Shown piece after piece: positions 5,146 through 43,947 of a DNA stretch of 64,000 nucleotides. The notes beneath the pieces are model-generated. The model did no database searches and was not told the origin of the DNA. It saw nothing but the letters and a program-made list of their open reading frames with translations. Position 1 is the first letter of the stretch. Each line of letters begins with the position of its first letter. The stretch comes from Dimorphilus gyrociliatus (Eukaryota; Animalia; Annelida), in NCBI GenBank assembly GCA_904063045.1, contig CAJFCJ010000003.1, positions 620,001 through 684,000 of the forward strand. The letters are read 5' to 3'. Both the position numbers and the translations under genes were made by a program.

Positions 5146-6726
5146 AGAGAGAAAAATAAACAAATACTGAGTAAATATTGCATAAAACATTTTTTTTGCT
5201 ACTATATGTAAATTAATATCGAGCGCCATCTTTGGTACATAATTAATAATTTATTAAAAGGATAACAAGGAATCGTTTGGCATTCGATAAAGTATAGGCA
5301 AAGAAATCGATATAAAGGTTAATAAAAGAGGTTAATTATTGAAGTCTTGGATGTATTTGTTGGCGCAGAACCTTTTAGTCTAGTTCCTTCTTTTCCTATT
5401 TCTACCACTTATACTTAAACAAAATAGTAGTAACTGGAAAACACATATCTATCTATGAATATTCATTACCTAATTTCTGAAGTATTTCACGTTCTTCGTA
5501 TATTCTTCTTGGCTGTGGACAGAATGAAAAGAAAAAATTAGAGATAAGAAAAACAAGCGCAGCTGTCCATTGGTCAACCGCAAAGAGATTTAATTGTTTG
5601 CTTAAAGAAATTGGGCATTAGTAAGATGAATGTCCAGCGTGTTGGACGCAGATTAAAAATACCACCGTTTTATTGTTCTAATTAAGTAGTTTTCAGGGAT
5701 TAAGATGATTAAGTAGTGCTCAGTCACGTTTTGCCTAATAGGCTGAAAAAATTATACGCTTTACCGTCGGCATTGGACGAGAAAATGACCGTTCTGCTCA
5801 GTCAACCGGTATGACAAACACTCTCTTGTCAAAAAACTCGAAAATTAATTGTCTTATATCGGATAGATGGCGCTCCGATTGAATGCGCCTCCCTCAAAGT
5901 TAATAATCTCTTTAGCCACTCATGAATATAATTGTTTGTAGGATAATCTCAATTAACTTTTCTTTATATGTTTCTTTATATTTTCTAATAAATACTTTAT
6001 CTTAATTATTATATTATTGTTATTAGCATTAGAAACAATAATGACTAGCTACTCCAAAATTAATTTGTTTGTAATTTACAAACAGATTTGATTGCTTTTT
6101 ATTAAATTCTCTGTATTTAGTTTATTAAGCCTTTATAGACACTTCCTTTCTCTCTGTCTCCTCCCCTTCAATCCCCCCGTTTTTTCCTCCTCCCCTTCCC
6201 CCTCTACTCATATACTTCGATTGCTAACATATATTTTAAATAGTGAAAAGAAAAGTTTGGAAAAAAGAAGGAATAAACAGAACTTAAACATCCGTAAGAA
6301 AAAAAAAGAAACTAGATAACGAGCAAATCATCAGTCGGACGCTGATTAGGGAGAAAAAGTCGATTGGAGAGATTGAAAAGGGCAGAAAAAGGATGAAATT
6401 TAAGATTGAGATAGAGGCTTTATGGGTGGTAGTAGCTTGTTGGAATAGACAGAGAGAGAGAGAGAGAGGGGGAAAGAGAGATAAAGAAGAGACACAGAAA
6501 AAGAAATTGAAAAACAGGAGGTAGGATAGGGCATTCAAATGGAAGGAATTGTTTATTTAGTTAACATACTTTTTATTTGGACTTAGATCTGTATTTATAC
6601 TAAAAAAAACCCAAATTTTTGTTGTTTGAATCCCATAATCCTTAAATCTCATAACTCGTTCTTAGTAATCAAAAGAGAAAATTCATAACTGGTTATTTTA
6701 TAAACGATAACTAGAGAAAAAACACA

Positions 6727-6762
<36 letters not shown>

Positions 6763-7136
6763 GTCTTTCTCTCTTTACATATACTTCTCCCTAGTAAACT
6801 TTATTCCGTCCTTCCTTACCAAACACGAGACTTTATAAATACATATAAAGTCAAGGTCACTTCTTATCATCTACTATTTACATAATACATCAGTTTATTT
6901 ATTTAATTGATATTAATATTATATTATATAGAGGAAAAAAGACTCTATATAGATATTTATTTATAAATTGTTTAAGTAATTCGCTCATCTTTCTCGTCCA
7001 CATCTTGCGATATATAAATTGATTAACGCGGAAGTAGATCGCTATATTATTAATATAGGCCTACATTAAGATAGGGAAGTGTAGAAAAATAAATTACTCT
7101 ACTTATATATTTCTTTCTCACTCTTTTCCCCCTGTT

Positions 7137-7167
<31 letters not shown>

Positions 7168-8380
7168 ACACACATGCTCTTTTACTTCCTTCCTCCCCCT
7201 TAAACGCTATTTCTCCACTGCTCATATCTTCTCTCTGCCCTTCTATTTCTTTTTTCAAAACATGCTCAAGTATATTCTTACACATATACAGAGTATACAC
7301 TTTATATATATACTGTATATATTTATTGTATATATTCTTAATGATAATAATAGATAGGCCTACGCGAAGAACTGATGAATATTAATTATTTGGTAAAATT
7401 ACCAAGAGAGTTTATATTTTGAAAAATCGAAGAAACATTTTTCTCTTAGCTAAGGCGAAACTTGAGTCTATTTTTTCTTTATTAAATTTACAGAAGATTA
7501 TCGCGTGATCGACTGTTTGTATTTATATTGTAGATATATTGGAACATGCTTGCGGATGTTTTTATTATTTTTGGCGTTTATTTCATGCCAGATGATGCGC
7601 AATTCTCTTCTTATAAATTTATACTTTCCTCTTTCTTCCTTGATTAACTGTAAAAATGTTTATATAAAGGGAATTGTTCTCGCCTCTCACCCTGATCTGA
7701 GTTTCTTTATCCCTCTTTCTCCATTTTATTTTCTTTTTAAGAAAAGAAAGAATTGAAGATAAAGAGGCAGAGAAGGAGAAGGAGATAGAGAAAGGAAGAG
7801 ACGCCTTCTTCTTGGTAAATTAAATGACGTCATGCACTTGTAAAGTCTATTAACGTTTTATTTTTCCGTATGAGTATTTAGTGTTATATTTTTCCCTTTC
7901 TTCCTTTCACTTTTATTACTTCCTTTTCTCCTTCTTCCTCTCGATTTTATACCTGAGATTTTGTCTGTTTGAATAGGAAGAAGACGACGAAAGATATTCC
8001 ATTTTTCCATTAATTAAACACACTGCCAAACCAGTCGCGTGATAAACCGACGTTTCTATATTTGCTCGCAATATAGGCCTAAGAAAGAAAAGTTCCTATT
8101 CTTACGGTTTATTGCGCTTTCTCGTCTTCATTGAATACATGGTAAAGCACTTAGACCTATTTTGTTCAATTAATTTTGAAAAAAGTCGCCGGTGTATATT
8201 GCGTGATTTTCAGTACGCTGAAGAAGGAAGTAACTCAAGAAAATACTTAGGGTCAATAGAAAGATGATTTAGAGAGCACCTGGCGCTAATATGAGTTTTC
8301 CATGAAAAAATTGCGCTTATTAGCGAAAATAATTAGGTTGTTCAATTGGTTACGTAAATGAAAAACTTGTTCATTCTAAC

Positions 8381-11300
8381 CTCGTATATTTTTGGCAATC
8401 TCTCGTGACCAGAACACAGTTGACTATGTGATCTAGAATAGGCTATTTCTCTTCCCCTCCACGACGAATTCTTCTCTCCGAACAATCGATGCTAAGGACG
8501 GTAAAAGAGGAAAAAATATGAGATGATAATAAGGGAAATACGATAAATTAAGTGAAATTAGTTTTGTACATTCAGCTAATTTTTCAATACTTAAACAAAT
8601 CAAGTCTATTCTGGCTTCATTTTCTCTTTAGTCATATGGATATAATCATAGGAGAATTTCTATTAAAAACTGTTATTTCCAGTAAAATAAATGATTAGGG
8701 ACGGAGAGCTTTGCCAAGCAATTTTATGTAATAATTAAAGGCTAGAAGTTCGGTAAGAAAGTACGATAAAATAATACTACCAGCAAGGAAAATTCATTGG
8801 TCAACTAAAGAATTATACTCACGTTTGCTACGCGCTCCTCATTATCCGATATGCATGAAACATCATCTTCAAAAGCGTATCTCACAGACCCATTGACCGG
8901 TACAACACCGCCATCATCTCCTCTCCTCTGGTGATTTTTCTTTTTCCTACGCCTCTTTCTTATCAGTACGCAGCAAATTATGATAAGGATAGCGAAGAGG
9001 ATGGAAGAACCTATTCCCAAGCTTGTTACTAGTGTAGTTTTCCCAAATTTATGAAAGAAGCTTGAAGACGATGCATCGACGATGATTTTGAATGATTTTG
9101 ATTCTGATAATTTGCCATCAGATATTCTTACTTCAAAGTTGAATTCTTCTTCCGAATGATCGTCTATCTGACCCTTTTGATGTTTTTACCAAAACATTGA
9201 TAAGAAAGGGGAAAAGGGACGGAAAAAAGAAGCAAAAGTAACGATTAAATCATAAATTATTAATAGAAAATATAATAAAAAACTATACATTTAGAAACAA
9301 TTCTCCATCGGCCGTTATTAGAAAGAGACGTCTATAGCGACGTTGCGTGATTTCGAATGTTAAATTCGTCCCTAAATCCTTATCTGCCGCCCTTATCTTC
9401 CCAATTAACGTTCCGTAACCAGCGTTTCTACTAACTGAAAATGTTAGCCCTGCTTCGTCGTAAAAATAAGGCTTTTCGTCATTCTTGTCTAATACTGTAA
9501 CCAAAATCTCTGCTTTATCGGAAAGGGAAGCGTCCATGACGTCTCTAGCTACGGCATAAAATTTGTATGAACTTTGTAATTCCCTATCGAGATCTCGTAG
9601 CAATCGTAACTTCCCCGTCTGTCTTTCAAGACTGAACGCTTCCGGGCCGTCTAATTCGTAGACGGTTTGGTTGAAGGGTGAAAGATCGAGGTCAACAGCT
9701 GTTAATTTTCCTAGGAGCCCCCTCCAATTCTCAGTAACGTTGAACTCGTAGGCTTTCTTCTCAAAGATTGGACGTTCGTCGTTGCAATTGTTAATTCTAA
9801 TAATCACGTGACCAGTTGATTGTCTACTAGGTTTTCCGTGATCTCGGACAGTAACTCTAAAAGAGAAGTTTTGCTGAATTTCAAAGTCCAATTTTTTCTT
9901 AAAGTATGGGAAAATTTTCTCGATTTGTTCTCCTTTCAATTGCAGAAAGAAAGGTAATTTATGATTGTATATGTTGAAAAATTTGTACTACTTATGGACA
10001 TAAATAGGCCTAGAATTTTCTCTTTTACCTTTATCTTCAATAGAGAGCCATAATTGAAAAAATGATCATAATAGGCTTTAAGAGACTTATTCTTCTAATA
10101 CTTATAACTTAAACATAATAAAAAAAGAAATAGCAACTGAGATCCTTGAATAAGAACCCATACTTTAAGACAAAGAAGCCCACTAGACGGATCCAACTGG
10201 AAAAAGTCGACGTCGGAATCAATCAGATAAGAGAGTTCGCCATTCGGACCGATATCGCCGTCATTCGCTCGAATACGCCCGATTACTGAGCCAACTATTG
10301 CCGTTTCATTGACGTTCATTTGAAGGGAAGAATTCTGTAGGATAGGGTTGTTGTCATTCACATCCTTGACCTTTACTGTTAAAGACTTCCAAGCGGTCCT
10401 TCGTGGATGACCTTTATCCGCACAATTAATCTTTATACTATAAGTATCACGATCTTCTCTGTCCAATTTTCGTGTGGTTACAAGTTGATATGAGTTCACG
10501 AAAGGTTTTATTTCAAATGGTTCACTAACTGTCGGAGAATTGGTTATATACTTTCCACTACTATTTGGATATGATACATTAAATATAAATATATGTGTCT
10601 TTTATGAACCCTCTCCACCTGTCCAATTAGTTTAATTACCTTGATGATATTTCTTGGATATGGAATATAAACAGCTCTTCCTCCTCTCGGCTCTGTTTGA
10701 TGCTAATTGCATCTTCTATAGAGTTTTAGGGATTACAGTACAATATTCATGGAGAAATGTCTATACTGGCTCTACTGTACGCTGCTATTTTTCGAATGAG
10801 CGATATTCGGTTAAATATAAAAGTTATATACTGGAGTTGAATCTCCTATCCCTAATATCCTAATTTCAGTCATATTACAGAAGTAAGACTGACAACTAAT
10901 TAGCAAGATAAAGGAACCTGGTAACTTCCTAATTATGTGTTCACCCTATGGATAAATTTGGCTAATGATTAAAGTTGAAGCAAAAGGAATAAATCCGTAT
11001 GTCATATAGCCGCATTTCATTGCTATCCTCATCATTATTAATGCAGGTTCTTTAAATTACTCCTTCTTTCCAAAATTACTTAAATGACAGATAATCATTG
11101 ACACAGAACTACATTTTTGATGAGAAACAAATTTCCATGTTGCCACCCCCAATCTCCACCCCCTAACCACCTATTCCCTGTTGATTTATTGACGAAGACT
11201 TAATTTTTCAAAAGGGTTTATGAATAACCAATTCTTCGACGAACCTGAACATTCTAATTCGCCATTTCTGCCGTCGTCTTTGTCCTCTAACAGAACTCTT

Positions 11301-13170
11301 GCTACGAACGCTTTTGTTTCTTGATCTTCGTTAACATAGGCAACTTTTGACGAAGTTAGAGTATCGATAGTAATCTCTGGCGGATTATCGTTAGCGTCTC
11401 GTACATTTACAATAACCCTAACAGGAGTGGAGCATTTTTTAGGCGTTCCTCTATCGCACGCCTTTACTGTGAAAAGATACCGGCTCTTTGTTTCATAATC
11501 CAATGGAAATCGTGAAAAGATTTCCCCAGTCTTCTCCTTTATCCTAAATTCATTATAAGATGCTAACCAATAAGTTACTTGTCCATTTCTCCCAGCATCT
11601 CTGTCTCTTGCAACTACATGACCAATTGGCGTGTTGATATGATTGTTTTCTAAAACACTACAATTCCCAGGGCGATTTTAAAATGTTATTTTAATCAGTA
11701 ATCATTATAATAAAATAGAAGAAACATTAAAGAAATAAGGAGGATAATGATAAAAAGAAGATAGGAGAGGGGAAAATTAATCAGATTAAATATTAGTAAT
11801 TTGGTTAAAAAGGGAGAAGGAAAGTAGGGAAGAATGAGTATGGAAAAAACTTGTTTTTAATCTTTTTTTAAGTATATAAAGAAAAGCAAATTTTAAAAAC
11901 GCCCCTTATGTTGTATGATGATCTTTGAAATTGAGGCTCATTATCGTTATCGTCCTTTATTATTAAAGTCAAGGGTAAGGAAGTCGACTTTGGAGGATTT
12001 CCTCCGTCAAAGGCTCTAAGTGTAAAGTGGTAGGAATTGATTAATTCTCTATCCAATCTTGAACTCAATACCAAATAAGGTTCGACGAATTGCGCTTTGC
12101 GGCGCGTATGAAAGGAGAATGTGGACGAATGTTTATTAATTAGTTTATAGCCTTTTATGGAAAATTGGCCGGAATCGATATCTGTGGCGATTGGTAGGAA
12201 GAATTTTGTAGAAATTTGCGAGTTTTCATTGATTTCTAGTTGAGTTTTAGCATTCTTAAAGCGATAAGAAACCGTTTTTTTTTTCTTTTCTCTAGATTCC
12301 TTTTTTTTTTAAAAAAAAATTGAATATAGAAAATAGAGGAAGAGAAAAAAAAATTGTATATTATCCATTTTACAAGAAGAGATTACAAGTTCAACAATAT
12401 TAAGAAAGTTGCATTATAGAATGCGGTAGGTTGAAAAAAAGCAGATTTATATTACAGAAAAGGCAACAAAAGAATGGTTAATGCTTTTCAAGAAGTAAAG
12501 AGCTTTAGGAGACGACCACGTTGTGAGAAATATGTCCCTGATTGGCTTACGTTGCGTCTAGTAAAATTCTTACATCTCAGTATACTAATATAATGATAAC
12601 TGATGCAAAACAGGATGATAGAGACAAAGTGGTAAACAGAGGAGGAAGGAAAGAGAAGGATGGTGAAAGGGTGAGAAAATGATGGACAGGTGTACATATA
12701 ATAGTATTCGAGAAGGAATATAAAGAAACGGGAGGAAATCTTACAAGTTTTATTCCTCTAACTTAATCAATATTATTGATAAAACGGTTAAGTATCACTT
12801 TAAAAATAGGAGCATTATCGTTACGATCCTTTATTAGTAAGGAGACCGGCAAGAGGCGGAAGTTAGAGCCGTCTAATACCGCTATGCCAAAGTTTAAGGG
12901 GCATTTCTTAAGCTGGGCGCAAATCGAATCCCTATCTATCCGGTTAATTGCCTCGAGTATGCCATTATTGATTCCAAAAAGTGAGGTAATATTGACTTTA
13001 GACGCGCTAGTCGTCACAATTCGAAACTTACTTGACGCCGGAACTCTTACATCCGCCGTCAAATTTGCCACAATTGTTCCGTTTGGTATTTCTTCGTAAA
13101 TACTATAGTCCAAACTTACGACGTAAGTTATAGTGCTGAGAATAACAAAACAAGTAAGAGAATGCAGCAT
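8381..13170 (-). CDS. Protocadherin with 7 cadherin repeats, signal peptide, TM helix and cytoplasmic tail (3' end uncertain)
   Basis: Exons 13170-12799, 12254-11905, 11657-11245, 10528-10164, 9897-9289, 9173-8823 and 8491-8381 join in frame. The protein has signal peptide MLHSLTCFVILSTITYVVS, repeated DRE/DYE/DFE, DxD and DxNDN(x)P calcium-binding motifs, and TM segment GIGSSILFAILIIICCVLI followed by RKRRRKKK. The intron 2 junction is non-canonical (see findings). Confidence 0.92.
9897..10170. repeat. Perfect 14-bp inverted repeat closing protocadherin intron 4
   Basis: TCTTAAAGTATGGG at 9897-9910 and CCCATACTTTAAGA at 10157-10170 are exact reverse complements. They span both splice junctions of the intron (10163-9898). 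Confidence 0.95.
10531..11240. repeat. 16-bp inverted repeat (15/16) closing protocadherin intron 3
   Basis: GTCGGAGAATTGGTTA at 10531-10546 pairs with TAACCAATTCTTCGAC at 11225-11240. The intron is 11244-10529. Confidence 0.93.
11659..11915. repeat. 15-bp inverted repeat (14/15) plus a 5-bp outer helix closing protocadherin intron 2
   Basis: GGGCGATTTTAAAAT at 11670-11684 pairs with ATTTTAAAAACGCCC at 11890-11904. After a 6x6 internal loop, TACAA (11659-11663) pairs with TTGTA (11911-11915). Confidence 0.9.
12256..12803. repeat. 23-bp imperfect inverted repeat (19/23) closing protocadherin intron 1
   Basis: TTAAAGCGATAAGAAACCGTTTT at 12256-12278 pairs with AAAACGGTTAAGTATCACTTTAA at 12781-12803. 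The intron is 12798-12255. Confidence 0.88.
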
Positions 13171-16100
13171 TTTTTCTTTTCCCGCGTTAGAAGTCTATGC
13201 GTCAAGCAGGCGTCTCCTTAACAAATCTTATTCTCCAAAGCCTTGCACGCAACCAAAGAAAAGGAGAAAAGGAAAAAGAATAGCTTTTAACAGTATCCAG
13301 AATAGACGCTCACTTTAGACGCCTCTGCGGGCGTCACTCGAAGCCGCTTTACTAATCTCGTCTACTTCGACCATCACTCAATCAAAACCGTTTTATGAGA
13401 GAAAATAACGGTTGTTTGCCAATAGACGATTAGAAGTTTTTCGGTTTGTATCGTTCGGCTAGGAAACACCCGATTCGTCTGAGGCATTCACAGTCACGTG
13501 ATCAGTGCGTCACCGTGTGTTAAATTCGGTTTGACGGGCGGAAAACTCAAAACCGGTGTCCATAGCTGCTTTTAAAAGAAAAAGTATTATTTTTTCACCA
13601 CTTTAGCTCAATGTCGGAATTCCGCTTGTTTCCACTTCCCTTAGCCTACTGTATATTTTATTCTTTTAACAATTCTGTTTTATACAATCTTAGCAGATTG
13701 ATTACCGTATGATGGCAGCACTGGGCAATGTTAGTCTTTATCCATTATTCCCTTCCAACTACTATATTATAAAATATATAATATAACAAGTTGCTGCAGC
13801 AAAAGTGATTCCCTTATCTCTAATCTAGCAATCTCAATTTTTTCTTCCTGGAAAACCGTTACCATATTTTAGTAAAAAAGAGAAAAAGGACGCGAGACGA
13901 GAGACGTTACTTCATCTTGTACTTAAATAAACGGAAATGAGAGCCAAATATAGTAAAGAGAAACAACTTTTTAATCATATTTAAAGAATCCTTTGGGATG
14001 CAAACAAAAGAAACGATTTCTACCTTATTAGTATTTACTTTAAACAACTACCCAGCTTCGCTATAATTGTCAAATTGCAAACCTTACTACAGTATATAAA
14101 AATAGAGTATCGCCATCTTACGGTAAACACAAAAAGTAATTTTCTCATTAAGCCCTTTGTCTCTCTTATCTATTATCATTTATATTCATACCAAATAAGA
14201 AGTTTTGTATTTATATGCATCATAGAACAAAAAGATACAATTAATAACCATAATTATTTATACATAGAGATTAAAAGATATTTACATAGCCTATCGCCTT
14301 CCTTTCCTTAAATAAAGATATAAGCGCTACAAGAGTTCTTAAGATAAGCCCCAATTTTTCCTTTATCTCTTATTTGCTTTGCATTGAACCCAAGCAATTA
14401 ACGACCAAAGTTAAGGCTAAGCAGCATTGGTTTTCGTCTCTACCGCCCTCTTTTTTAATAAACTATGGTAAATCGTTAGCAAAGAAGTTATTTCGACGAT
14501 AAACAATAATAATGTAGATATTAATATATGTATATGATGATAATTATGTTAATTAGATAGCATTTTTCTACTGGAAAAGAAGTAATAGAGGTTAATGAGA
14601 ATTGAAAGAGCGTAAGATATGCACTTAACTTATCTTGATCGGAATTCGCAATAGGAAAATTTATACAGTAGGTTATTTTTCATCGGGATTATACCGTTAG
14701 GGGAAAAGATTTCAATGTGGATGGAGAAATGAATTTGTCTAATTCCCTTTTTTATCTCTATTCTATTATTCAATTGAAACTATTAAACTAGAATAAAAAC
14801 TGTATATTCTCTCTTCATTCTCTCCTCTTGATTCTTTAAATTTCTTTTGAAATGTATAAGAAAACTTCTCGTCTAAATTGTTAATCTTAACGTTTTACCC
14901 TTTCATTTCATTGAAAACTTCTTAACACGAGTTTATTTGACTGTTTTTGTTCGCAATAAAGTGTTTATAAAGCATTTTAGACTTAAGGCAAACGAGATTT
15001 AAACTAAACAGAAAGTAAATAAAATTGAAGTGTTAAAGAAAAAAAAAAAAGAAGGTTAAAAAAAAATACAAACAAAAACCGTCTAATCAAATAATTTAAT
15101 AGATTGGACGTCAAACTATTTATATATATAGATATATAAAAACTATACAATAGTTCAAAGTTGTCGGCCGACTTAATCGATGGGCGTCAAATAGGATTAA
15201 AGAGAAAGGGATATGAAGAAAAATACTATTAGTGCCAGCAGATGTCGCCCTTCTGCGTCGGCGGTTAACAGATAAAAGGGATACAGGGGATGAGCAATCA
15301 ATGGCACGCAATCTTATTAATATTGACCATAAATGTAATGTACCACTAATTGAACACTTATCTAGTGCGAACCAGCAAATCACAAGAATTATGTAACATT
15401 AAAGAAATTTTTAAGACATCAATAGACTTTACCGCCTTAGACGTACCTTTAACATTCCGTGACATTACGTTATAAGAAAATTAAATTGGGGTTAAATTAA
15501 CACGAATTAACCACACGTGGAGCTTTTTATTAAAAATAAAATAGGGAATAAAATATAAAACATACCTTTCTCCGTCTTTCTTTTTCTATATCTTCTCCTC
15601 TCTCTCTCTCTTTCTCTCTCCTTTTTATTTAATTATTATTTTAAAGAGGGCGTTACTATTGCGTCATTTAATTCCCGTGCAAAGCACGAAAGGTGCATAT
15701 GTCTTTCCTCACGTCTTTTTTTTCTTCTTATAGAAAGTAGGCCTATCAGATAATAAAAGACTTTCTTTCATGAATATATGTATATATCATTGATATTATT
15801 AATATAAGCTCACTTAATCTTTTCAATGATCAAACATCAATCGTATCATGTCAATGTATAAAATTGATGTTATCTGCACGTATCAATTGTCTAACATCAA
15901 CAATTATTTACGTATCCATTCTCAAATCTTTTATTCATCCAATCTTAAACCAATAAACCCTAGATAACGGTTCAAAAATTAGGCCTATATCATTTCAAGT
16001 GAGAAAAAAAGGGTTGAAAGAATGATAGAATGAAAGAAATACAGAGATATTCATTATTTCTTGTTTTTATTTTGAGGTGGTACTATATTGGTTTTGTTTA

Positions 16101-30298: not shown

Positions 30299-32192
30299 AT
30301 GCCGGGAGCTCCTGGCCAACCCCCAACTCCAACTCTTCATCCAAGAACCAGACCAGAAGCGAACGAATGGGCTCTTAAAATGAGGAAAACAAATGACTGG
30401 TTTAGACACGATGGAGGAAATGTAGAAGAAAGAAAAAGATTACCTAGAAAATTACAAAGCGAAAAAGCTCACGAAATTGCGGATAAAGCCAGAGGTACGT
30501 GTCAAATAATGTAATAGAAAGTTCAATAGAGTGTCATGAAAGGAATAAATAGCTGCGTTTCTTAAATCTATATAATTATATATCCTCTGAGAGATGTTAA
30601 TTACCAAAACGACGCTTTACTTTGGTTTTATTTTACAATAAATGATAAAGGAGAAGAGAAATACCTGAGTTTTAAGACATGTATATGCTATTTTATAAAA
30701 AAATTGTAAATAAAAAGATGCTCATGACATATGAACAAAAGAATCGTGAAGATAGAGAGAAGAGGATGAAATTTTTATAAATAGCTGATGCAACATTTTT
30801 CAGAAACGAAATCTCTTTGAAGGAAATTTCCTTTTTTTTGCCTTTTTTGCCTTTTTAATCATACATTTCCTTTGACGTTTCTCTTAACAGGTATGGCTGA
30901 TGAATGGTTTACTCACAATGCAAATGGCTCAGCGGTAAAACCAAGAAAATCTCGATGTCCCAGTGCCGAATCTTTAAGAAATTCGAAAATGAACGGTGAA
31001 TCGTCCAAGTGGTTTAAATTTGATGAAAACAAAAATTATCATACACCTAGGGCAAAACATCGTTTAACCGAATCGTCAGCGTTTGAAATTAAAGAAAAAG
31101 CTAAAGGTCAGAGTGATCAATGGTACAAACACGAACATAAGAATCCTGAAGAAGTTTTTACTAAGCATCGAAGTCCTTCGAAGGCTTGTAAAGATAACTT
31201 GGATAAGATGAGGGCTAGTTCAGATTGGTATGTACACGGAGATAAAGTTAATCAAGTCGTTCATTACGAAAAACATAGACTTACTGATGTAAACGGTAAG
31301 TTTAAGGCCTATATTTTGTCGCATTTCCTGACTCGATACAAATTTCTTTTATTTATCAGCTGAAGATTATCTTCAAAGAAACAAGCATGGATCTGTGTCC
31401 CAATGGTTTACTCATGATCACGACGATGACATCGATGAACAACCATACAACTCATCTTTCAGTAAAGGAAACATAGTAATAAAGAGATATCTACATGATC
31501 TTTATCATTACTAATGAAACATATCATTTCAGGATTCGGAAGATTGGTTTAATCACGAAAACGCACCTAAATCTATACCGAAGTCTAAAAGACAAGTCTC
31601 GGAAATGGATAGCGTTCTAAAACAAGATGGTAAAAGTGATCCTTTTTACAAAGAGTATGTCTCTAGAGTAAAACCGGAAGCTAGAGAATGGGCAGAGAGA
31701 AACGTCAAAGGCTTAATGGAGAAATTGATTGTGCATGACCCGGAAGCCAATCCAGCACCTCCAGCAGCAGCTAGAGTTGTAAAGCCAGAAGCTAAAAAAA
31801 CATATGAGATGAGCAAAGGTGTTATGAGTAGTTTGTTGGAAGGACACCCGTCTCAGGCCATTAAAAAGAATAACGTAGGAAGAAGTGTCAAACCAGAAGC
31901 TGCAGATACGGCGGAGAAACACGCCGGTGGAGGCATGAGAAAGGTATTTGCTAATAGACCTGCAACACCCGGTAGAAATGGTGGAGCAGCAAGAGCAATT
32001 CCACCAGAAGCTCGTGATTGGGCCGAGAGAAACAAAGGGACTGTAGGGCAGGTTCTTAATCAAAGCACCGACTTCACACTAGCAGGAAAGCCAGCTCCAA
32101 AGTTAGCTTCTAATAGTGGAAGACAAATTGCTATGAAACATAGAGGAACAGCTGGTCCTCTAATATTTAGTCAACCCGTATCAGTACAATGA
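30299..32192 (+). CDS. Uncharacterised tandem-repeat protein (WFxH and PEAxxxAxxxxG repeats), 458 aa
   Basis: Exons 30299-30494, 30891-31295, 31360-31475 and 31533-32192 total 1377 nt. About 11-12 repeats of roughly 25-35 aa are visible by eye. An extra 5' exon is possible. Confidence 0.8.
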
Positions 32193-38848: not shown

Positions 38849-41800
38849 ATGAGTAAGCTTTCGTTCCGTACCCGCAATTTAGACGCTCAGAAACAAATGG
38901 GCGTCTATATTCGCGATGAAATTCCTGATATGGTCGCAGATTTCGCGGTTATCAGCCGCGCTGTACCGCAAATGCCTACTGGCATGGAAAAAGAAGAGGA
39001 AGCGGTAAGTCGACATTTCTAGTACATTAAAAACTCGTCCATTAGCCGCCATATTGGATTTTAGTAGAAAACCCGGTTAAAGTTGGCGCGCATTTTTCTT
39101 TAAAATAAAATTTTTTAGATGGATTACATGTGCAACATGTCCTCTAAATTTTATTTTACCTCATGCCGTCTTCCTTTTTTATTTATCAAGTCGTTTAAAG
39201 CTATTCTCTGTAAAGTCACGTGACTTATATTATCGTGGGATTTCCCCGCGTTTTTCGTTTTATAGGCCTATTAAACTCCCAACTTTTGCCATGATCAACC
39301 CTAAGTAAACTTAAATAAGAATTTTTACAACTGCATTTTATACAAATATTCGTACTATTATAAAAGAATATGCTCTTTTATATTATATACTTGTAATTCT
39401 AGGCACGTTGCTCTATAAAAGACGAAAAAAATTTTAATTAATGCTCAGTTAAATTTGATTGTTTTATTATAAGTTTTTTGATGTTTAAAATGAAACGAAA
39501 CAAAATTTGACTATACTTTACATCGAATATTATTTAAAAACTGCTAAAACAGTTTCCAATAATGCCATAAGTTATTCATTATAGTGATATGAATATTGTA
39601 ATATATCTGGTATAATCATTTGATAATAGTTATTATACTACATAATAATGATTCTTGTATTACTTCTATGTTCATAGTAAATTCTAATATTCTATACGAG
39701 AGCTATAGTTTAACTGTACACGTTGCTGTAATTAAAGTACGCTATTTGCGGGTATTATCATATTCAAATTAACAAAAAAGACAATGATATATTCATAATA
39801 ATATTATGCATCGTATTTTTGGATAAAAGAAAAGTATGTTGAAGTAAAAATCAAAATTGGTTGATGTTATCATTTCAATTGTTATATAAAGTCAGTTGTA
39901 AAAAGAGAATAGATTTAAAAAAGTTCTCAAAAAAATACTTTTACAAAGGAAACTTTAGAATGAGAGGTTTTTTGAAAGGAAATGAAAAAGTTGTACATTT
40001 CTTATGTATATACGCCATCTGTCGGTCTTGTATTGAGTTACATTTTTATCCAATTTACTATAAAATAATCCTATAGTCTTTCTTAATTTTGCTTTTGATA
40101 TGCTTTTCATTGAATATATGTATAGATGGTTAATTACACTGAGTAGAAGATGTTCAAACATTTATAATTATTCATATGTTATGTATTCGCGCAACATGAG
40201 ACAAACTTAATACAACGATACATTTAATGTAAAAAGTATAGATTTGCACTTGATATTTGTCTTGAACAAAATTTATGCATGTTCTATTGTAGCCAAAAAA
40301 GAAATAGTTTATATTGTTCTATCTTCTTATTTTGCAATTATTCATAATTTTTCTTTTATGTTTCGTACTACAGGAGCATCACCTTCAGAAAGCATTGTCC
40401 GCCCAGCAGATCCACGGCACGACGGAGAATCGTGTTATACCGACGCCCGAAATACATGAAATCCTCGAACGCTATGAAAAACTATATAGAACCGATTGGA
40501 AATGTCCAAAACAATATATTCATTTACAAGCATGGGGGGTAGATCAAGAAGAGGTTGATTATGATATGGACGAAGAAGATGAAACTTGGCTAAGGAATGA
40601 GGTACGGAAGTTCGATTTGACCAGCGACAAATTTGAGAGGATGATGGATCGATTAGAGAACGCCAGTGGACAAGTGGTTGTGAGTCTGAACGAGGCCAAG
40701 ATGCTCTTAAAAGAAGATGATGAACTAACAATAGCCGTTTATGATTATTGGCTTAGTAAAAGATTAGCTAATCAAGCTCAAACTCTCATTGCCAAAGTTA
40801 AAACAGACAAAAGGGATGGTACTGGCTCCAGTGATCCTTATGTTGCGTTTCGACGGCGAACCGAAAAAATGCAAACCCGAAAAAATAGAAAAAATGACGA
40901 AGCGTCGTTTGAGAAAATGAACAAATTACGACGAGATATAAAGAAAGCTTTGACAATTATTGATTTAGTAAAACGACGGGAAAAGAGTAAAAAAGAGCTT
41001 TTAGAGTTTACCAAGGAGGTATTCGAAAAACGGTACTATTGCGAGGATTATAACGGCGAATTGGTTGCCGAAGCAAAGAAACAACGAGTGGAAAAACGTC
41101 CAATGTTTAATTTAACTCAGTCTTACCAGTGGCCTATTTCTTGGCAAAATGAATGGAATGAGGAAACAACTCAGGCTCCGGCCAGAAAGAAAAGAAAGTA
41201 CGAGAAGAAGAGGCGTATTAATCATCATTCTGCAGAGAGATTACCACAATATAATGATTATGACGATTTCGTTGTATCAGAAGAAGAGAGTGTTAGCTCT
41301 GAGGAAGAGGAGGAGGTTGATGGTACTTTCTCATTTAGGAGAAAACCTGGTAGCAAATATCTGGCACCAGTTTACGAACCATGTGAACGATTTGCTTGGA
41401 CTGCTCCTGAAGATGGAGGGGTTGGTGACGAAAGATTTAGATTTTCATTGGTTTCATTTGATAAACCGAGAAGGCATTGTGTTGGCTATGTAAGGAGGAG
41501 AATTGGCAGAGGCGGCAGGGTGGTATTCGACAGAGCGAGAACGGAATGGGACCAATACTGTAGGAGTAAAGATATAGGGAAGGACATAAAATCACATTAT
41601 AGCAATTGTGAACATCGAAGCGTCCCGACAGCATCTATTTCGAACGTGTCCAGTTTTGGAACGCATAAAGACGATCTAATCAAAGCGGAAAGTGCTTCCA
41701 GGGAGAAGCAAATTAACAGCTCGATTGTTAAAGATTGTAACGAATCCGATAATCGGTTAACACCGATTGACAGGGACACCGTGAGAAATACGATTGCCTG

Positions 41801-41897: not shown

Positions 41898-41976
41898 TCT
41901 TTCAGCGCCGGTTGCGAAACGGTTCGTGTATTGAAATGTGTTCAAAGACAGTTAGTTGAATTGTTTATTACGGGGA

Positions 41977-42232
41977 TAGATGGCGCTGCAGAACTTTTGC
42001 TTTATACATAGCAGTAAAGATTTTCAGGTTGTAAAAAAAAAAACACAAAAAAGGTGAAAAGATTAAAATGATTAAAAAAATCTCTTCCTTTATAAAACTA
42101 AAACATCAGAATTTATTGCCTCCAACTAACGAATAATTTTATTCAAAACCTTATTAAACAAAACCAAGCAAAACAGTAAGGTTAATTTGTACTATTTTTA
42201 AAATTTGATATCTCTGCAGCGCCACCTAACGG
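41977..42232. promoter_or_regulatory. Convergent pair of CTCF-like motifs downstream of EPC1
   Basis: TAGATGGCGCT lies at 41977-41987 (+) and CCGTTAGGTGGCGCT at 42218-42232 (-). Confidence 0.55.
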
Positions 42233-43947
42233 CATCGGTATCATTCCGTTAGCAATATTATGGGCCATAAGTGCCAAAAAAAAGTGATTTTTACTTTGTT
42301 GTTCCTATGTGTTTATAGTAAGTAAAGATGTCATTTTTATTGATCGAAAAATTATAAAAGTTCGAGCATATGCGAAAACTGTCCTTTATAAAGTAGCCGT
42401 TTTGAAAAAGACAACTGATTGCCTTTGAACACACTAGTTGTTTGTGTGTTGGAAGAAAAAAATATATATATTAATTGAGTTTCGCACTGCCTCGTGAACA
42501 TTTATTTTTTAAATATTCTGTGATAGTAAACACTCTTTTCTTTTTTTTATCGTCCCATATAGATTTGACGTCTTTTTTCCGGGCAGCTTTCGCATAATCT
42601 TGTAAATAATTTGTATATACACATGTATAAATCATGTACAGTAACGATATTTGAGTGTTTTTTGTTGATAATAAAGAAACCCATAAAGTTTGTTAGTTTG
42701 TTACTAATTGGCGATCAAATACTCAGTTTTTTTTCTCTTTTTGTGATTTATTTTTTTTTCCTATTATGTATATTGTTCATATTTTTCAAAGAATGACCAA
42801 TAGCTTCTTCTGACAAGTAAAATCATTTATTTCTATATATATATATATATTTATATATATTATATAACTATCATTATGAAAAATATCTCGTATGGCTTTT
42901 GACCATATATACAGTATATAGATATAGATATATATATATATATTCTATATTTTTTTTGCTTTAATTGCTAAATTTACTCACATGGATTAGAAAATTAACT
43001 TCTTTCTTATATTGAAAACTTTGGTCTATATCCATTCTGACTAAATATTAACCTACTTGGCAAAAAGATATAAAATAAAAAAAAAAAACATAAAAACTCG
43101 TCAAGGTCATAGGTCATTAAAATTTTTATATTTTTTATTTTCTCTTTGAGTTAATAATTTTTTATGATGTTGGACAATTTTATTTTGTTTCTTTTTTTTA
43201 AAAAAAACAAAGAGTCAGATAAGTGACTAAAGAAATAATAGAATTCTATAGCCTTATTCCACTTCCTCCACATAAGAAAAACAATTATTAAAATTGTTTG
43301 TATTGTCATGTAGAAAGTAAAGATACCGTGTCTAAATTCTATTGTTGGTAAGATATCAACGTTTTTTCTTCTATCAAAAGAAATTGAGTTAAAGCGGAAG
43401 AGCTATATTAAATATTACGAAGAAAGCTTTTAGTCTTAGTGTTATTAAAAAATTGTTACCTGATCTTTAAATGAACAGGGTTACGTGTCCAACTTTTCGT
43501 GAACGTGATATTATCCCTCTGGTCAGAGTTGATTAAAACCGTGGTATATAAAATTACAAACGTTCATTTAATAAATTTAGCTGAAATAACTATTTAAGCT
43601 TATTGATTATACACGCTAAGAAATTAAGGTAAATGTATTATGTATGTATATTAGATAAATATTAATAAAACGTGACTAAATGATCTAAGTATCTATCATA
43701 CCGCTAATGTTGTACTTTAAATGAACACGAATTCGTCCAGGTGTATGTTTTTCAACGTCAACGTCTAATTGTTTCGGTTAGGCGTCACTTGAGCAACGCT
43801 CAAAGCGGTGACGCCCATTGTCCCGCCTTTCTGCGGCAGTGCTATTAAGGAATTCAAAACTATGTAGAAATATATATGTTTTTCAATTTCGTTCTATTCG
43901 TGTAATTTAATACTTACTATGTACATAAAAAGAAGGAAAAAGAGCAT

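What the first reader, a model, noticed from the sequence alone, without database searches (positions are those of the whole stretch)
9897..12803. Four consecutive protocadherin ectodomain introns are each clamped by their own terminal inverted repeat
Seen: introns 1-4 (544, 247, 716 and 266 nt) have 5' and 3' ends that are reverse complements (19/23, 14/15 plus 5, 15/16 and 14/14). The arms start within 0-4 nt of the donor and end within 0-12 nt of the acceptor. The four stems are unrelated in sequence, the donors are weak (gtgata, gggcgt, gttcgt, gtatgg), and introns 2-4 lack a good pyrimidine tract. Intron 6 of the same gene has a canonical donor, a pyrimidine-rich acceptor and no stem, and most other introns in the window show no stem. 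Rough arithmetic: a 14/14 match is of order 1e-8 per register at this base composition. Known: protocadherin ectodomains are typically encoded by one very large exon, so these introns are probably lineage-specific gains. Inference: this is either a class of DNA-transposon-born introns (Introner-like) or introns defined by RNA pairing that juxtaposes weak splice sites.
Basis: partly seen in the sequence, partly recalled or inferred. Interest (0 to 1): 0.88.

Follow-up and report, generated by a model that had tools for sequence, protein, structure and literature searches.

The report
Conserved terminal stems clamp four introns
Four neighbouring introns of a protocadherin-like gene each begin and end with sequences that pair with each other; a related species has kept these pairings while the rest of each intron drifted, so the stems probably help the cell splice out introns with poor splice signals, and they may be remnants of old transposon insertions.

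Summary
They are 12255-12798, 11658-11904, 10529-11244 and 9898-10163. Intron 2 is a non-canonical GG-AG intron. Each intron has a terminal inverted repeat that is rare in random same-length segments (P 0.0003-0.003 each). Introns 5 and 6 have none.

New here is the orthologous locus of a related species (L001). There the arms are 130/138 identical, against 1075/1597 for intron interiors (Fisher p 1e-13). One base pair changed on both sides (U-A to C-G), one changed from G-C to G-U, and the GG donor is kept. The terminal stem is in the minimum-energy fold in both species. A stronger inverted repeat outside any intron is not conserved.

Best reading: the stems are RNA helices under selection that bring together splice sites with mediocre donors and no polypyrimidine tract at the acceptor. 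Introns 1 and 4 read TTAA|AG...CT|TTAA, and splicing restores the coding sequence with one silent change. This fits an old Kolobok-like MITE origin, but I found no other copies. The first-stage scan noted similar introns, often with GA, GG or GC donors, elsewhere in this genome. The closest known cases are introners, teleost structure-dependent introns and euglenid intermediate introns.

The parts
5483..13170 (-). Protocadherin-like gene. Coding exons: 13170-12799, 12254-11905, 11657-11245, 10528-10164, 9897-9289, 9173-8823, 8491-8381, and a next exon ending at 5512.
   Evidence: Spliced contigs of X9 and X1-X3. The loose end at 8381 matches window 5483-5512. Pfam PF08266 Cadherin_2 and PF00028 Cadherin hit the orthologous ORFs.
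12255..12798 (-). Intron 1, 544 nt, GT-AG, phase 0. Reads TTAA|AGTGATA...TATCGCT|TTAA-G.
   Evidence: Joint 12254|12799 in X9 and X1; sequence.
12781..12807 (-). Intron 1 5' arm. It includes the last 9 exon nt and the donor.
   Evidence: Identical in L001.
12252..12278 (-). Intron 1 3' arm. It includes the acceptor and 3 exon nt.
   Evidence: Identical in L001.
11658..11904 (-). Intron 2, 247 nt, non-canonical GG-AG, phase 2.
   Evidence: Joint 11657|11905 in X9 at depth 78, and the same junction in X1-X3. GG is also present in the L001 genomic contig.
11890..11904 (-). Intron 2 5' arm GGGCGTTTTTAAAAT, flush with the donor.
11670..11684 (-). Intron 2 3' arm ATTTTAAAATCGCCC, ending 12 nt before the acceptor.
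   Evidence: U-A to C-G and G-C to G-U changes in L001.
10529..11244 (-). Intron 3, 716 nt, GT-AG, phase 1.
   Evidence: Joint 10528|11245 in X9.
11224..11240 (-). Intron 3 5' arm GTCGAAGAATTGGTTAT (positions +5 to +21).
10531..10547 (-). Intron 3 3' arm ATAACCAATTCTCCGAC (positions -19 to -3).
9898..10163 (-). Intron 4, 266 nt, GT-AG, phase 0. Reads TC-TTAA|AGTATGGG...CCCATACT|TTAA-GA.
   Evidence: Joint 9897|10164 in X9 and X1-X3; sequence.
10157..10170 (-). Intron 4 5' arm TCTTAAAGTATGGG (7 exon nt plus 7 intron nt).
   Evidence: Identical in L001.
9897..9910 (-). Intron 4 3' arm CCCATACTTTAAGA (13 intron nt plus 1 exon nt).
   Evidence: Identical in L001.
9174..9288 (-). Intron 5, 115 nt, GT-AG, no terminal stem (internal control).
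8492..8822 (-). Intron 6, 331 nt, GTGAGT donor, strong pyrimidine tract, no stem (internal control).
5513..8380 (-). Intron 7, 2868 nt, GT-AG, strong pyrimidine tract.

Best explanation
Introns 1-4 are true RNA-spliced introns. In each, the two ends form a 14-27 bp helix in the pre-mRNA. The helix is kept by purifying selection. It loops out the intron body and holds the 5' and 3' splice sites together. This compensates for poor linear signals: mediocre or GG donors, and no pyrimidine tract next to the acceptor. I infer that removal is still spliceosomal, because three of the four introns are GT-AG and the fourth is G-purine...AG.

The helices most probably began as the terminal inverted repeats of small non-autonomous DNA transposons inserted into a once less interrupted ectodomain coding region. 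For introns 1 and 4 this would be a TTAA-targeting, AG...CT-ended (Kolobok-like) element inserted at xTT-AAG. Splicing from the element's GT to the AG formed by the target-site copy plus the next host G removes exactly the element plus 4 nt. That leaves AAA in place of AAG, both lysine.

Shown: the boundaries, the repeats, their statistical excess, their conservation, and the folds. Inferred: that the helix is needed for splicing, that the spliceosome does the cutting, and the transposon origin.
For: - RNA contigs give the junctions.
- Terminal complementarity has P 0.0003-0.003 per intron, and is absent from introns 5 and 6.
- In the orthologous locus L001 the exons are 75-94% identical and the intron interiors 55-73%. 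The arms are 130/138 identical (Fisher p 1.1e-13).
- In intron 2 one pair changed on both sides (U-A to C-G) and one went from G-C to G-U. In intron 3 both arms changed at the same two stem positions, so a mismatch moved by one position.
- Full-length folds keep 20-25 expected end-to-end pairs in both species, against 0-5 for introns 5 and 6. The stem is in the MFE and centroid folds.
- Three G-U pairs lie on the sense strand.
- The strongest non-terminal inverted repeat nearby (13859-13882 / 14448-14471) is only 13/24 conserved in each arm.
- There is no pyrimidine tract at the acceptors of introns 1-4, unlike introns 6 and 7.
- Introns 1 and 4 show the TTAA|AG..CT|TTAA geometry in an identical register, with +1 pairing with -7. 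Kolobok is defined by TTAA duplications and RR..YY termini (PMC9587614).
- The observed mRNA junction reads TTTAAA|AAT. Precise DNA excision would give TTTAAG-AAT, so this is splicing.
- First-stage notes report further such introns with GA, GG or GC donors in the same genome. These are unchecked leads.
Against: - Only two genomic lineages could be compared, so covariation rests on one double change and one G-U change. Two pairs are lost in intron 3.
- In introns 1 and 4 the helix buries the donor itself, which in known systems tends to inhibit U1 binding.
- The register between helix and splice sites differs among the introns: +1:-7, +1:-13, +5:-3 and +1:-7. No single geometry is evident.
- Introns 1 and 3 also hold other highly conserved blocks, so conservation alone does not prove a role in splicing.
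- On the transposon origin: the window and L001 hold no second copy. The four arm pairs are unrelated in sequence. Introns 2 and 3 have no target-site duplication beyond the AG/CAG repeat that splice consensus gives anyway. TTAA is a palindrome and common at 31% GC.
Confidence: 0.55

Rival explanations
1. The stems evolved in place, without any transposon. Ordinary introns with weak signals acquired end-to-end complementarity by point mutation, because it improves splicing in a compact AT-rich genome.
For: The four arm pairs are unrelated and single-copy. Introns 2 and 3 have no target-site duplication. The introns are old enough to be shared by three lineages. Selection on pairing is shown.
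Against: Building 14-23 bp of complementarity by point mutation four times in one gene is improbable. Introns 1 and 4 share the same TTAA|AG..CT|TTAA-G layout and register, and restore the host codon exactly. That is what an insertion predicts, and selection for pairing does not require it.
Confidence: 0.22
2. The inverted repeats are inert relics of transposon insertions (classic introner-like introns). They have no role in splicing, and ordinary splice signals do the work.
For: TIR-bounded, transposon-derived introns are known (PMC11282704, PMC9860276). Introns 1 and 4 have the TTAA geometry.
Against: Neutral relics should decay like the intron interior. The arms are 94% identical against 67% (p 1e-13), and the changes keep pairing. 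A neutral inverted repeat nearby has decayed.
Confidence: 0.08
3. The helices are conserved for a purpose other than splice-site juxtaposition. Examples: control of intron retention, stable or circular intronic RNA, a double-stranded RNA substrate, or paired DNA-level regulatory sites.
For: Introns 1 and 3 contain other strongly conserved blocks with CCAAT-like and TAATTA-like motifs, so these introns carry regulatory information. Unspliced coverage of the introns is appreciable in X9.
Against: The arms sit at or within 12 nt of both splice sites in all four introns. They coincide with missing pyrimidine tracts and a GG donor. No Rfam family matches.
Confidence: 0.1
4. Removal is independent of the spliceosome and guided by the helix, as proposed for euglenid nonconventional introns.
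For: There is a terminal helix, no pyrimidine tract, and one non-GT donor that is conserved in two species. The first-stage scan notes many GA, GG and GC donors in this genome.
Against: Three of the four introns are exact GT-AG and the fourth is GG-AG. The helix-to-cut register is not constant. The euglenid +4..+6 / -8..-6 pattern is not seen.
Confidence: 0.04
5. Chance complementarity in AT-rich DNA.
For: Window-wide counts of inverted repeats are near the Markov controls.
Against: Per-intron P is 0.0003-0.003 in four of seven introns, and the arms are conserved in a second species.
Confidence: 0.01

Closest known systems
Introner elements / MITE-derived introns (Micromonas, Aureococcus, dinoflagellates; in animals the tunicate Fritillaria borealis)
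   Same: The intron is bounded by terminal inverted repeats. In introns 1 and 4 one splice site lies in the element and the other is made from the target-site copy, so splicing removes the element plus one duplication. Non-canonical donors are tolerated (review PMC11282704; PMC9860276).
   Different: No multi-copy family was seen, and the four arm pairs are unrelated. The introns are old and shared by three lineages. The arms are under purifying selection. The borders are GT-AG or GG-AG, not the AG-AC / AG-AT of Fritillaria.
Structure-dependent introns of teleosts (RNA structure replaces the need for U2AF2, PMC4691745)
   Same: Complementary sequences at the two intron ends bridge the splice sites. 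The conventional pyrimidine tract is weak or absent.
   Different: The teleost stems are made of (GT)n and (AC)n simple repeats. Here the arms are unique sequences, and two of them include the donor itself. Independence from U2AF was not tested.
Euglenid nonconventional and intermediate introns (PMC4770533; PMC11282704)
   Same: A terminal helix brings the ends together, there is no pyrimidine tract, and a transposon origin is suspected. Intermediate introns combine canonical borders with such a helix.
   Different: The euglenid pairing has a fixed register (+4..+6 with -8..-6) and variable borders, and excision gives circles. Here the register varies and the borders are essentially canonical.
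Kolobok superfamily non-autonomous elements
   Same: TTAA flanks and 5'-RR...YY-3' (AG...CT) termini with terminal inverted repeats in introns 1 and 4 (PMC9587614).
   Different: No transposase, no other copies and no sequence similarity to a described family were available. TTAA is palindromic, so it also simply extends the stem.

Membership tests
Introner / MITE-derived intron | Terminal inverted repeats at the intron ends | tested here: met
   14-27 nt arms in introns 1-4.
Introner / MITE-derived intron | Target-site duplication flanking the repeats, one copy spliced out | tested here: inconclusive
   TTAA on both sides in introns 1 and 4, with exact frame restoration. Introns 2 and 3 have none beyond an AG/CAG repeat that the splice consensus explains.
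Introner / MITE-derived intron | Many similar copies at unrelated intron positions in the genome | tested here: inconclusive
   No second copy in the 64 kb window or in the 11 kb L001. The rest of the genome was not available.
Introner / MITE-derived intron | Lineage-specific or polymorphic intron positions | tested here: inconclusive
   The junctions of introns 1, 2 and 4 (intron 3 at a similar place) recur in the mRNA of the related organisms A/B (X1-X3), and all four introns are present in L001. Deeper comparison failed.
Kolobok-type element | TTAA target-site duplication and RR..YY termini | tested here: met
   Introns 1 and 4 read TTAA|AG...CT|TTAA. Definition from PMC9587614. Not met by introns 2 and 3.
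Kolobok-type element | Related autonomous copy with a Kolobok DDD/E transposase, or similarity to a described family | not testable with these tools
   Only one window of the genome is readable, and no repeat library is offered.
Structure-dependent introns (teleost type) | End-to-end complementarity bridging the splice sites | tested here: met
Structure-dependent introns (teleost type) | Arms made of (GT)n / (AC)n simple repeats | tested here: not met
   The arms are unique sequences.
Structure-dependent introns (teleost type) | Splicing without U2AF2, dependent on the stem | not testable with these tools
   Needs biochemistry. Only the missing pyrimidine tract is shown.
Euglenid nonconventional introns | Non-canonical variable borders | tested here: not met
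   Three of four are GT-AG and one is GG-AG.
Euglenid nonconventional introns | Fixed pairing register +4..+6 with -8..-6 | tested here: not met
   Registers are +1:-7, +1:-13, +5:-3 and +1:-7.
Euglenid nonconventional introns | Excised as circles after conventional splicing | not tested
U12-type introns | RTATCCTT donor and TCCTTAAC branch site | tested here: not met
   The donors are GTGATA, GGGCGT, GTTCGT and GTATGG.

The most novel reading that the evidence does not exclude
This animal genome may hold a genome-wide class of introns whose recognition depends on a terminal RNA helix. The helix would substitute for the +2 U of the donor (allowing GA, GG or GC donors) and for the pyrimidine tract. 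That would be an animal counterpart of euglenid intermediate introns, born from transposon ends and then fixed by selection as splicing signals.
Probability: 0.3. Interest if true: 0.85.

Novelty: new variant of a known kind. Interest (0 to 1): 0.66.

Why it matters
Transposon-born introns are mostly known as young, multi-copy elements in protists and in one tunicate. Structure-dependent splicing in animals is known mainly from simple-repeat introns of fish.

Here the two ideas meet in one gene. The stems are old and single-copy, and they look like transposon ends. They have been kept by selection across species, at introns with poor linear signals and one GG donor.

If the class is genome-wide, as unchecked scan notes suggest, it offers a tractable animal system for two questions. 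How does an inserted element become a permanent intron? How far can RNA structure replace splice-site sequence?

Tried and rejected
- The profile-free search of 1.84 billion representatives with exon 5 returned only giant multi-repeat cadherins. It gave no orthologue for comparing intron positions in other phyla.
- Rfam found nothing real in the region.
- blastn of the introns against the window and L001 found no other copies.
- The introns are not whole-length foldbacks. The complementarity is confined to the ends.
- The window-wide scan for inverted repeats showed no further clear intron-terminal stems. The T-box hit flanks an exon. The hits near the enhancer-of-polycomb (EPC) gene lie inside its intron 1 or past the stop of its long reading frame.
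- Precise DNA excision at TTAA is rejected, because the mRNA reads AAA and not AAG at the intron 1 junction.
- The U12 type is rejected from the donors.
- I tried to identify the organism (atlas search, papers). Nothing was conclusive and I make no claim about it.
Full report
**Gene and boundaries.** The region holds a protocadherin-like gene on the minus strand. It has an N-terminal Cadherin_2 domain followed by Cadherin repeats, according to the Pfam hits on the orthologous ORFs. I laid contigs of four public runs on 7450-13400.

Run X9 is 100% identical to the window and contains spliced contigs. It is therefore RNA of the same organism. Its joints skip:
- 12255-12798 (544 nt)
- 11658-11904 (247 nt)
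- 10529-11244 (716 nt)
- 9898-10163 (266 nt)
- 9174-9288 (115 nt)
- 8492-8822 (331 nt)

A loose end at 8381 matches 5483-5512, which gives a seventh intron at 5513-8380. Its coordinate for the first donor is about 5 nt too high.

On the gene strand the borders are GT-AG, except for intron 2. There the only registers allowed by the 2-nt ambiguity are GG-AG, GG-TA and AG-GT. GG-AG is the one that holds in both species. Runs X1-X3 come from related organisms (about 93% identity in exon 5). They show the same junctions for introns 1, 2, 4 and 6, and a similar one for intron 3.

**The repeats and chance.** The arms are as follows:
- Intron 1: 12781-12807 with 12252-12278. This is 19/23 Watson-Crick in the core, or 24/27 pairs with G-U and exonic pairs counted, around a 3-nt internal loop.
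- Intron 2: 11890-11904 with 11670-11684 (14/15).
- Intron 3: 11224-11240 with 10531-10547 (16/17).
- Intron 4: 10157-10170 with 9897-9910 (14/14).

Against 3000 random segments of the same length from either strand of the window, the ungapped score has P = 0.003, 0.0013, 0.0003 and 0.0003. The duplex energies (-18 to -25 kcal/mol) lie 3-5 standard deviations below the null. Introns 5 and 6 are at the null.

The window as a whole has no clear excess of inverted repeats. What is unusual is their position at intron ends. The complementarity is confined to the termini, and the introns are not whole-length foldbacks.

**Comparative evidence.** A search with exon 5 found one related ORF, P0001, at 81% identity. 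Its 11,070-nt Logan contig L001 carries the whole orthologous locus with all six introns. Exons are 75-94% identical and the interiors of introns 1-4 are 55-73% identical.

The arms are 130/138 identical, against 1075/1597 for the interiors (Fisher p 1.1e-13). The arms of introns 1 and 4 are unchanged.

In intron 2 the GG donor is kept. The innermost pair changed on both sides (U-A to C-G) and the outermost went from G-C to G-U. In intron 3 both arms changed at the same two adjacent stem positions, so the single mismatch moved by one position. One terminal pair was lost.

Full-length folds keep the terminal helix in both species, with 20-25 expected end-to-end pairs against 0-5 for introns 5 and 6. 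It appears in both the MFE and centroid structures of introns 2 and 4.

As a control I took the strongest non-terminal inverted repeat near the gene (13859-13882 / 14448-14471). It is only 13/24 conserved in each arm, which is no better than the 68% identity of the surrounding upstream region.

**Signals.** The last 25 nt of introns 1-4 are 50-59% pyrimidine, with runs of 4-7. Introns 6 and 7 have 86-91%, with runs of 12-14. The donors of introns 1, 3 and 4 are mediocre but no worse than those of introns 5 and 7.

**Origin.** Introns 1 and 4 both read TTAA|AG...CT|TTAA followed by G, in the same register, with donor G+1 pairing with position -7. If an element was inserted at xTT-AAG, splicing from its GT to the AG formed by the second TTAA plus the host G removes exactly the element plus 4 nt. 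AAG becomes AAA, and both encode lysine.

Kolobok elements are defined by TTAA duplications and RR..YY termini (PMC9587614). The observed mRNA reads AAA at the intron 1 junction and not the AAG of an empty site. The contigs therefore reflect splicing and not DNA excision. In organism B the mRNA has AAG there. This is most simply an A-to-G change of the last exon base, which would still pair as G-U.

Several points count against a transposon origin:
- Introns 2 and 3 have no target-site duplication.
- The four arm pairs are unrelated in sequence.
- Neither the window nor L001 has another copy.
- The introns are shared by three lineages.

**Interpretation.** The stems are functional RNA helices that juxtapose poorly marked splice sites. 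They probably descend from transposon ends.

I give the functional-helix part about 0.6 and the transposon origin about 0.5. The buried donor in introns 1 and 4 and the variable register remain unexplained.

**Known parallels.** The nearest known systems are these:
- Introners and the MITE-derived introns of Fritillaria (PMC11282704; PMC9860276; bioRxiv 10.1101/2025.08.15.670264).
- Teleost structure-dependent introns (PMC4691745).
- Euglenid intermediate introns (PMC4770533).

I found no paper linking such introns to annelids. The one compact-annelid genome paper I read does not mention them. The organism of this window was not established.

First-stage notes of this scan report similar introns at other places in the same genome, often with GA, GG or GC donors. 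These are unchecked leads and I did not use them as evidence.

Noticed in passing
window 12355-12545 (inside intron 1): A block of about 190 nt is about 95% identical to L001 and more conserved than the flanking exons. It contains GCCAATCAG (CCAAT-box-like) and CACAACGTGGTCG. It could be an intronic enhancer or an internal promoter. An RNA-run contig of organism A also covers 12369-12579.
   Followed up: partly
window 10875-10935 and 10600-10700 (inside intron 3): Two blocks are highly conserved against L001 (about 90% and about 96% identical), with no indels in the second. They contain TAATTAG / TAATTAAACTAATTGG homeodomain-site-like motifs and an AAG|GTAATT donor-like site. They could be enhancers or an alternative exon.
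   Followed up: partly
window 13859-13882 / 14448-14471: A 24-nt imperfect inverted repeat (score 18) lies upstream of the gene's start codon, spanning 613 nt. It is not conserved in L001. It could be a MITE, chance, or a 5'UTR feature. RNA coverage beyond 13400 was not examined.
   Followed up: partly
window 13702-13716 / 14112-14126: Two inverted AAGATGGC / GCCATC motifs (YY1-site-like) lie upstream of the gene. Each is fairly conserved, but their mutual pairing decays in L001 (10/15).
   Followed up: partly
window 39194-39919: A TTAA-flanked inverted repeat (TTAA|AGCTATTCTCT...AGAGAATAGAT|TTAA, score 13) lies inside intron 1 of the enhancer-of-polycomb gene. It is a possible small TTAA-targeting element and the only other one of this shape in the window.
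   Followed up: no
window 41937-42433 and 41977-42228: Two nested inverted repeats (22 and 16 nt arms) lie just past the stop of the long enhancer-of-polycomb reading frame.
   Followed up: no
window 30869-30884 / 31696-31711: A perfect 16-nt inverted repeat spans an exon, an intron and part of the next exon of a repeat-protein gene.
   Followed up: no
window 12799 (last base of exon 1): The mRNA of organism B (X2, X3) reads AAG where the window and L001 read AAA. This equals the hypothetical empty-site sequence. It is also explained by a single substitution that keeps a G-U pair.
   Followed up: partly
window 6444-7166 (inside intron 7): Long (GA)n and (TC)n tracts form low-complexity inverted repeats within the 2.9 kb intron 7.
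   Followed up: no
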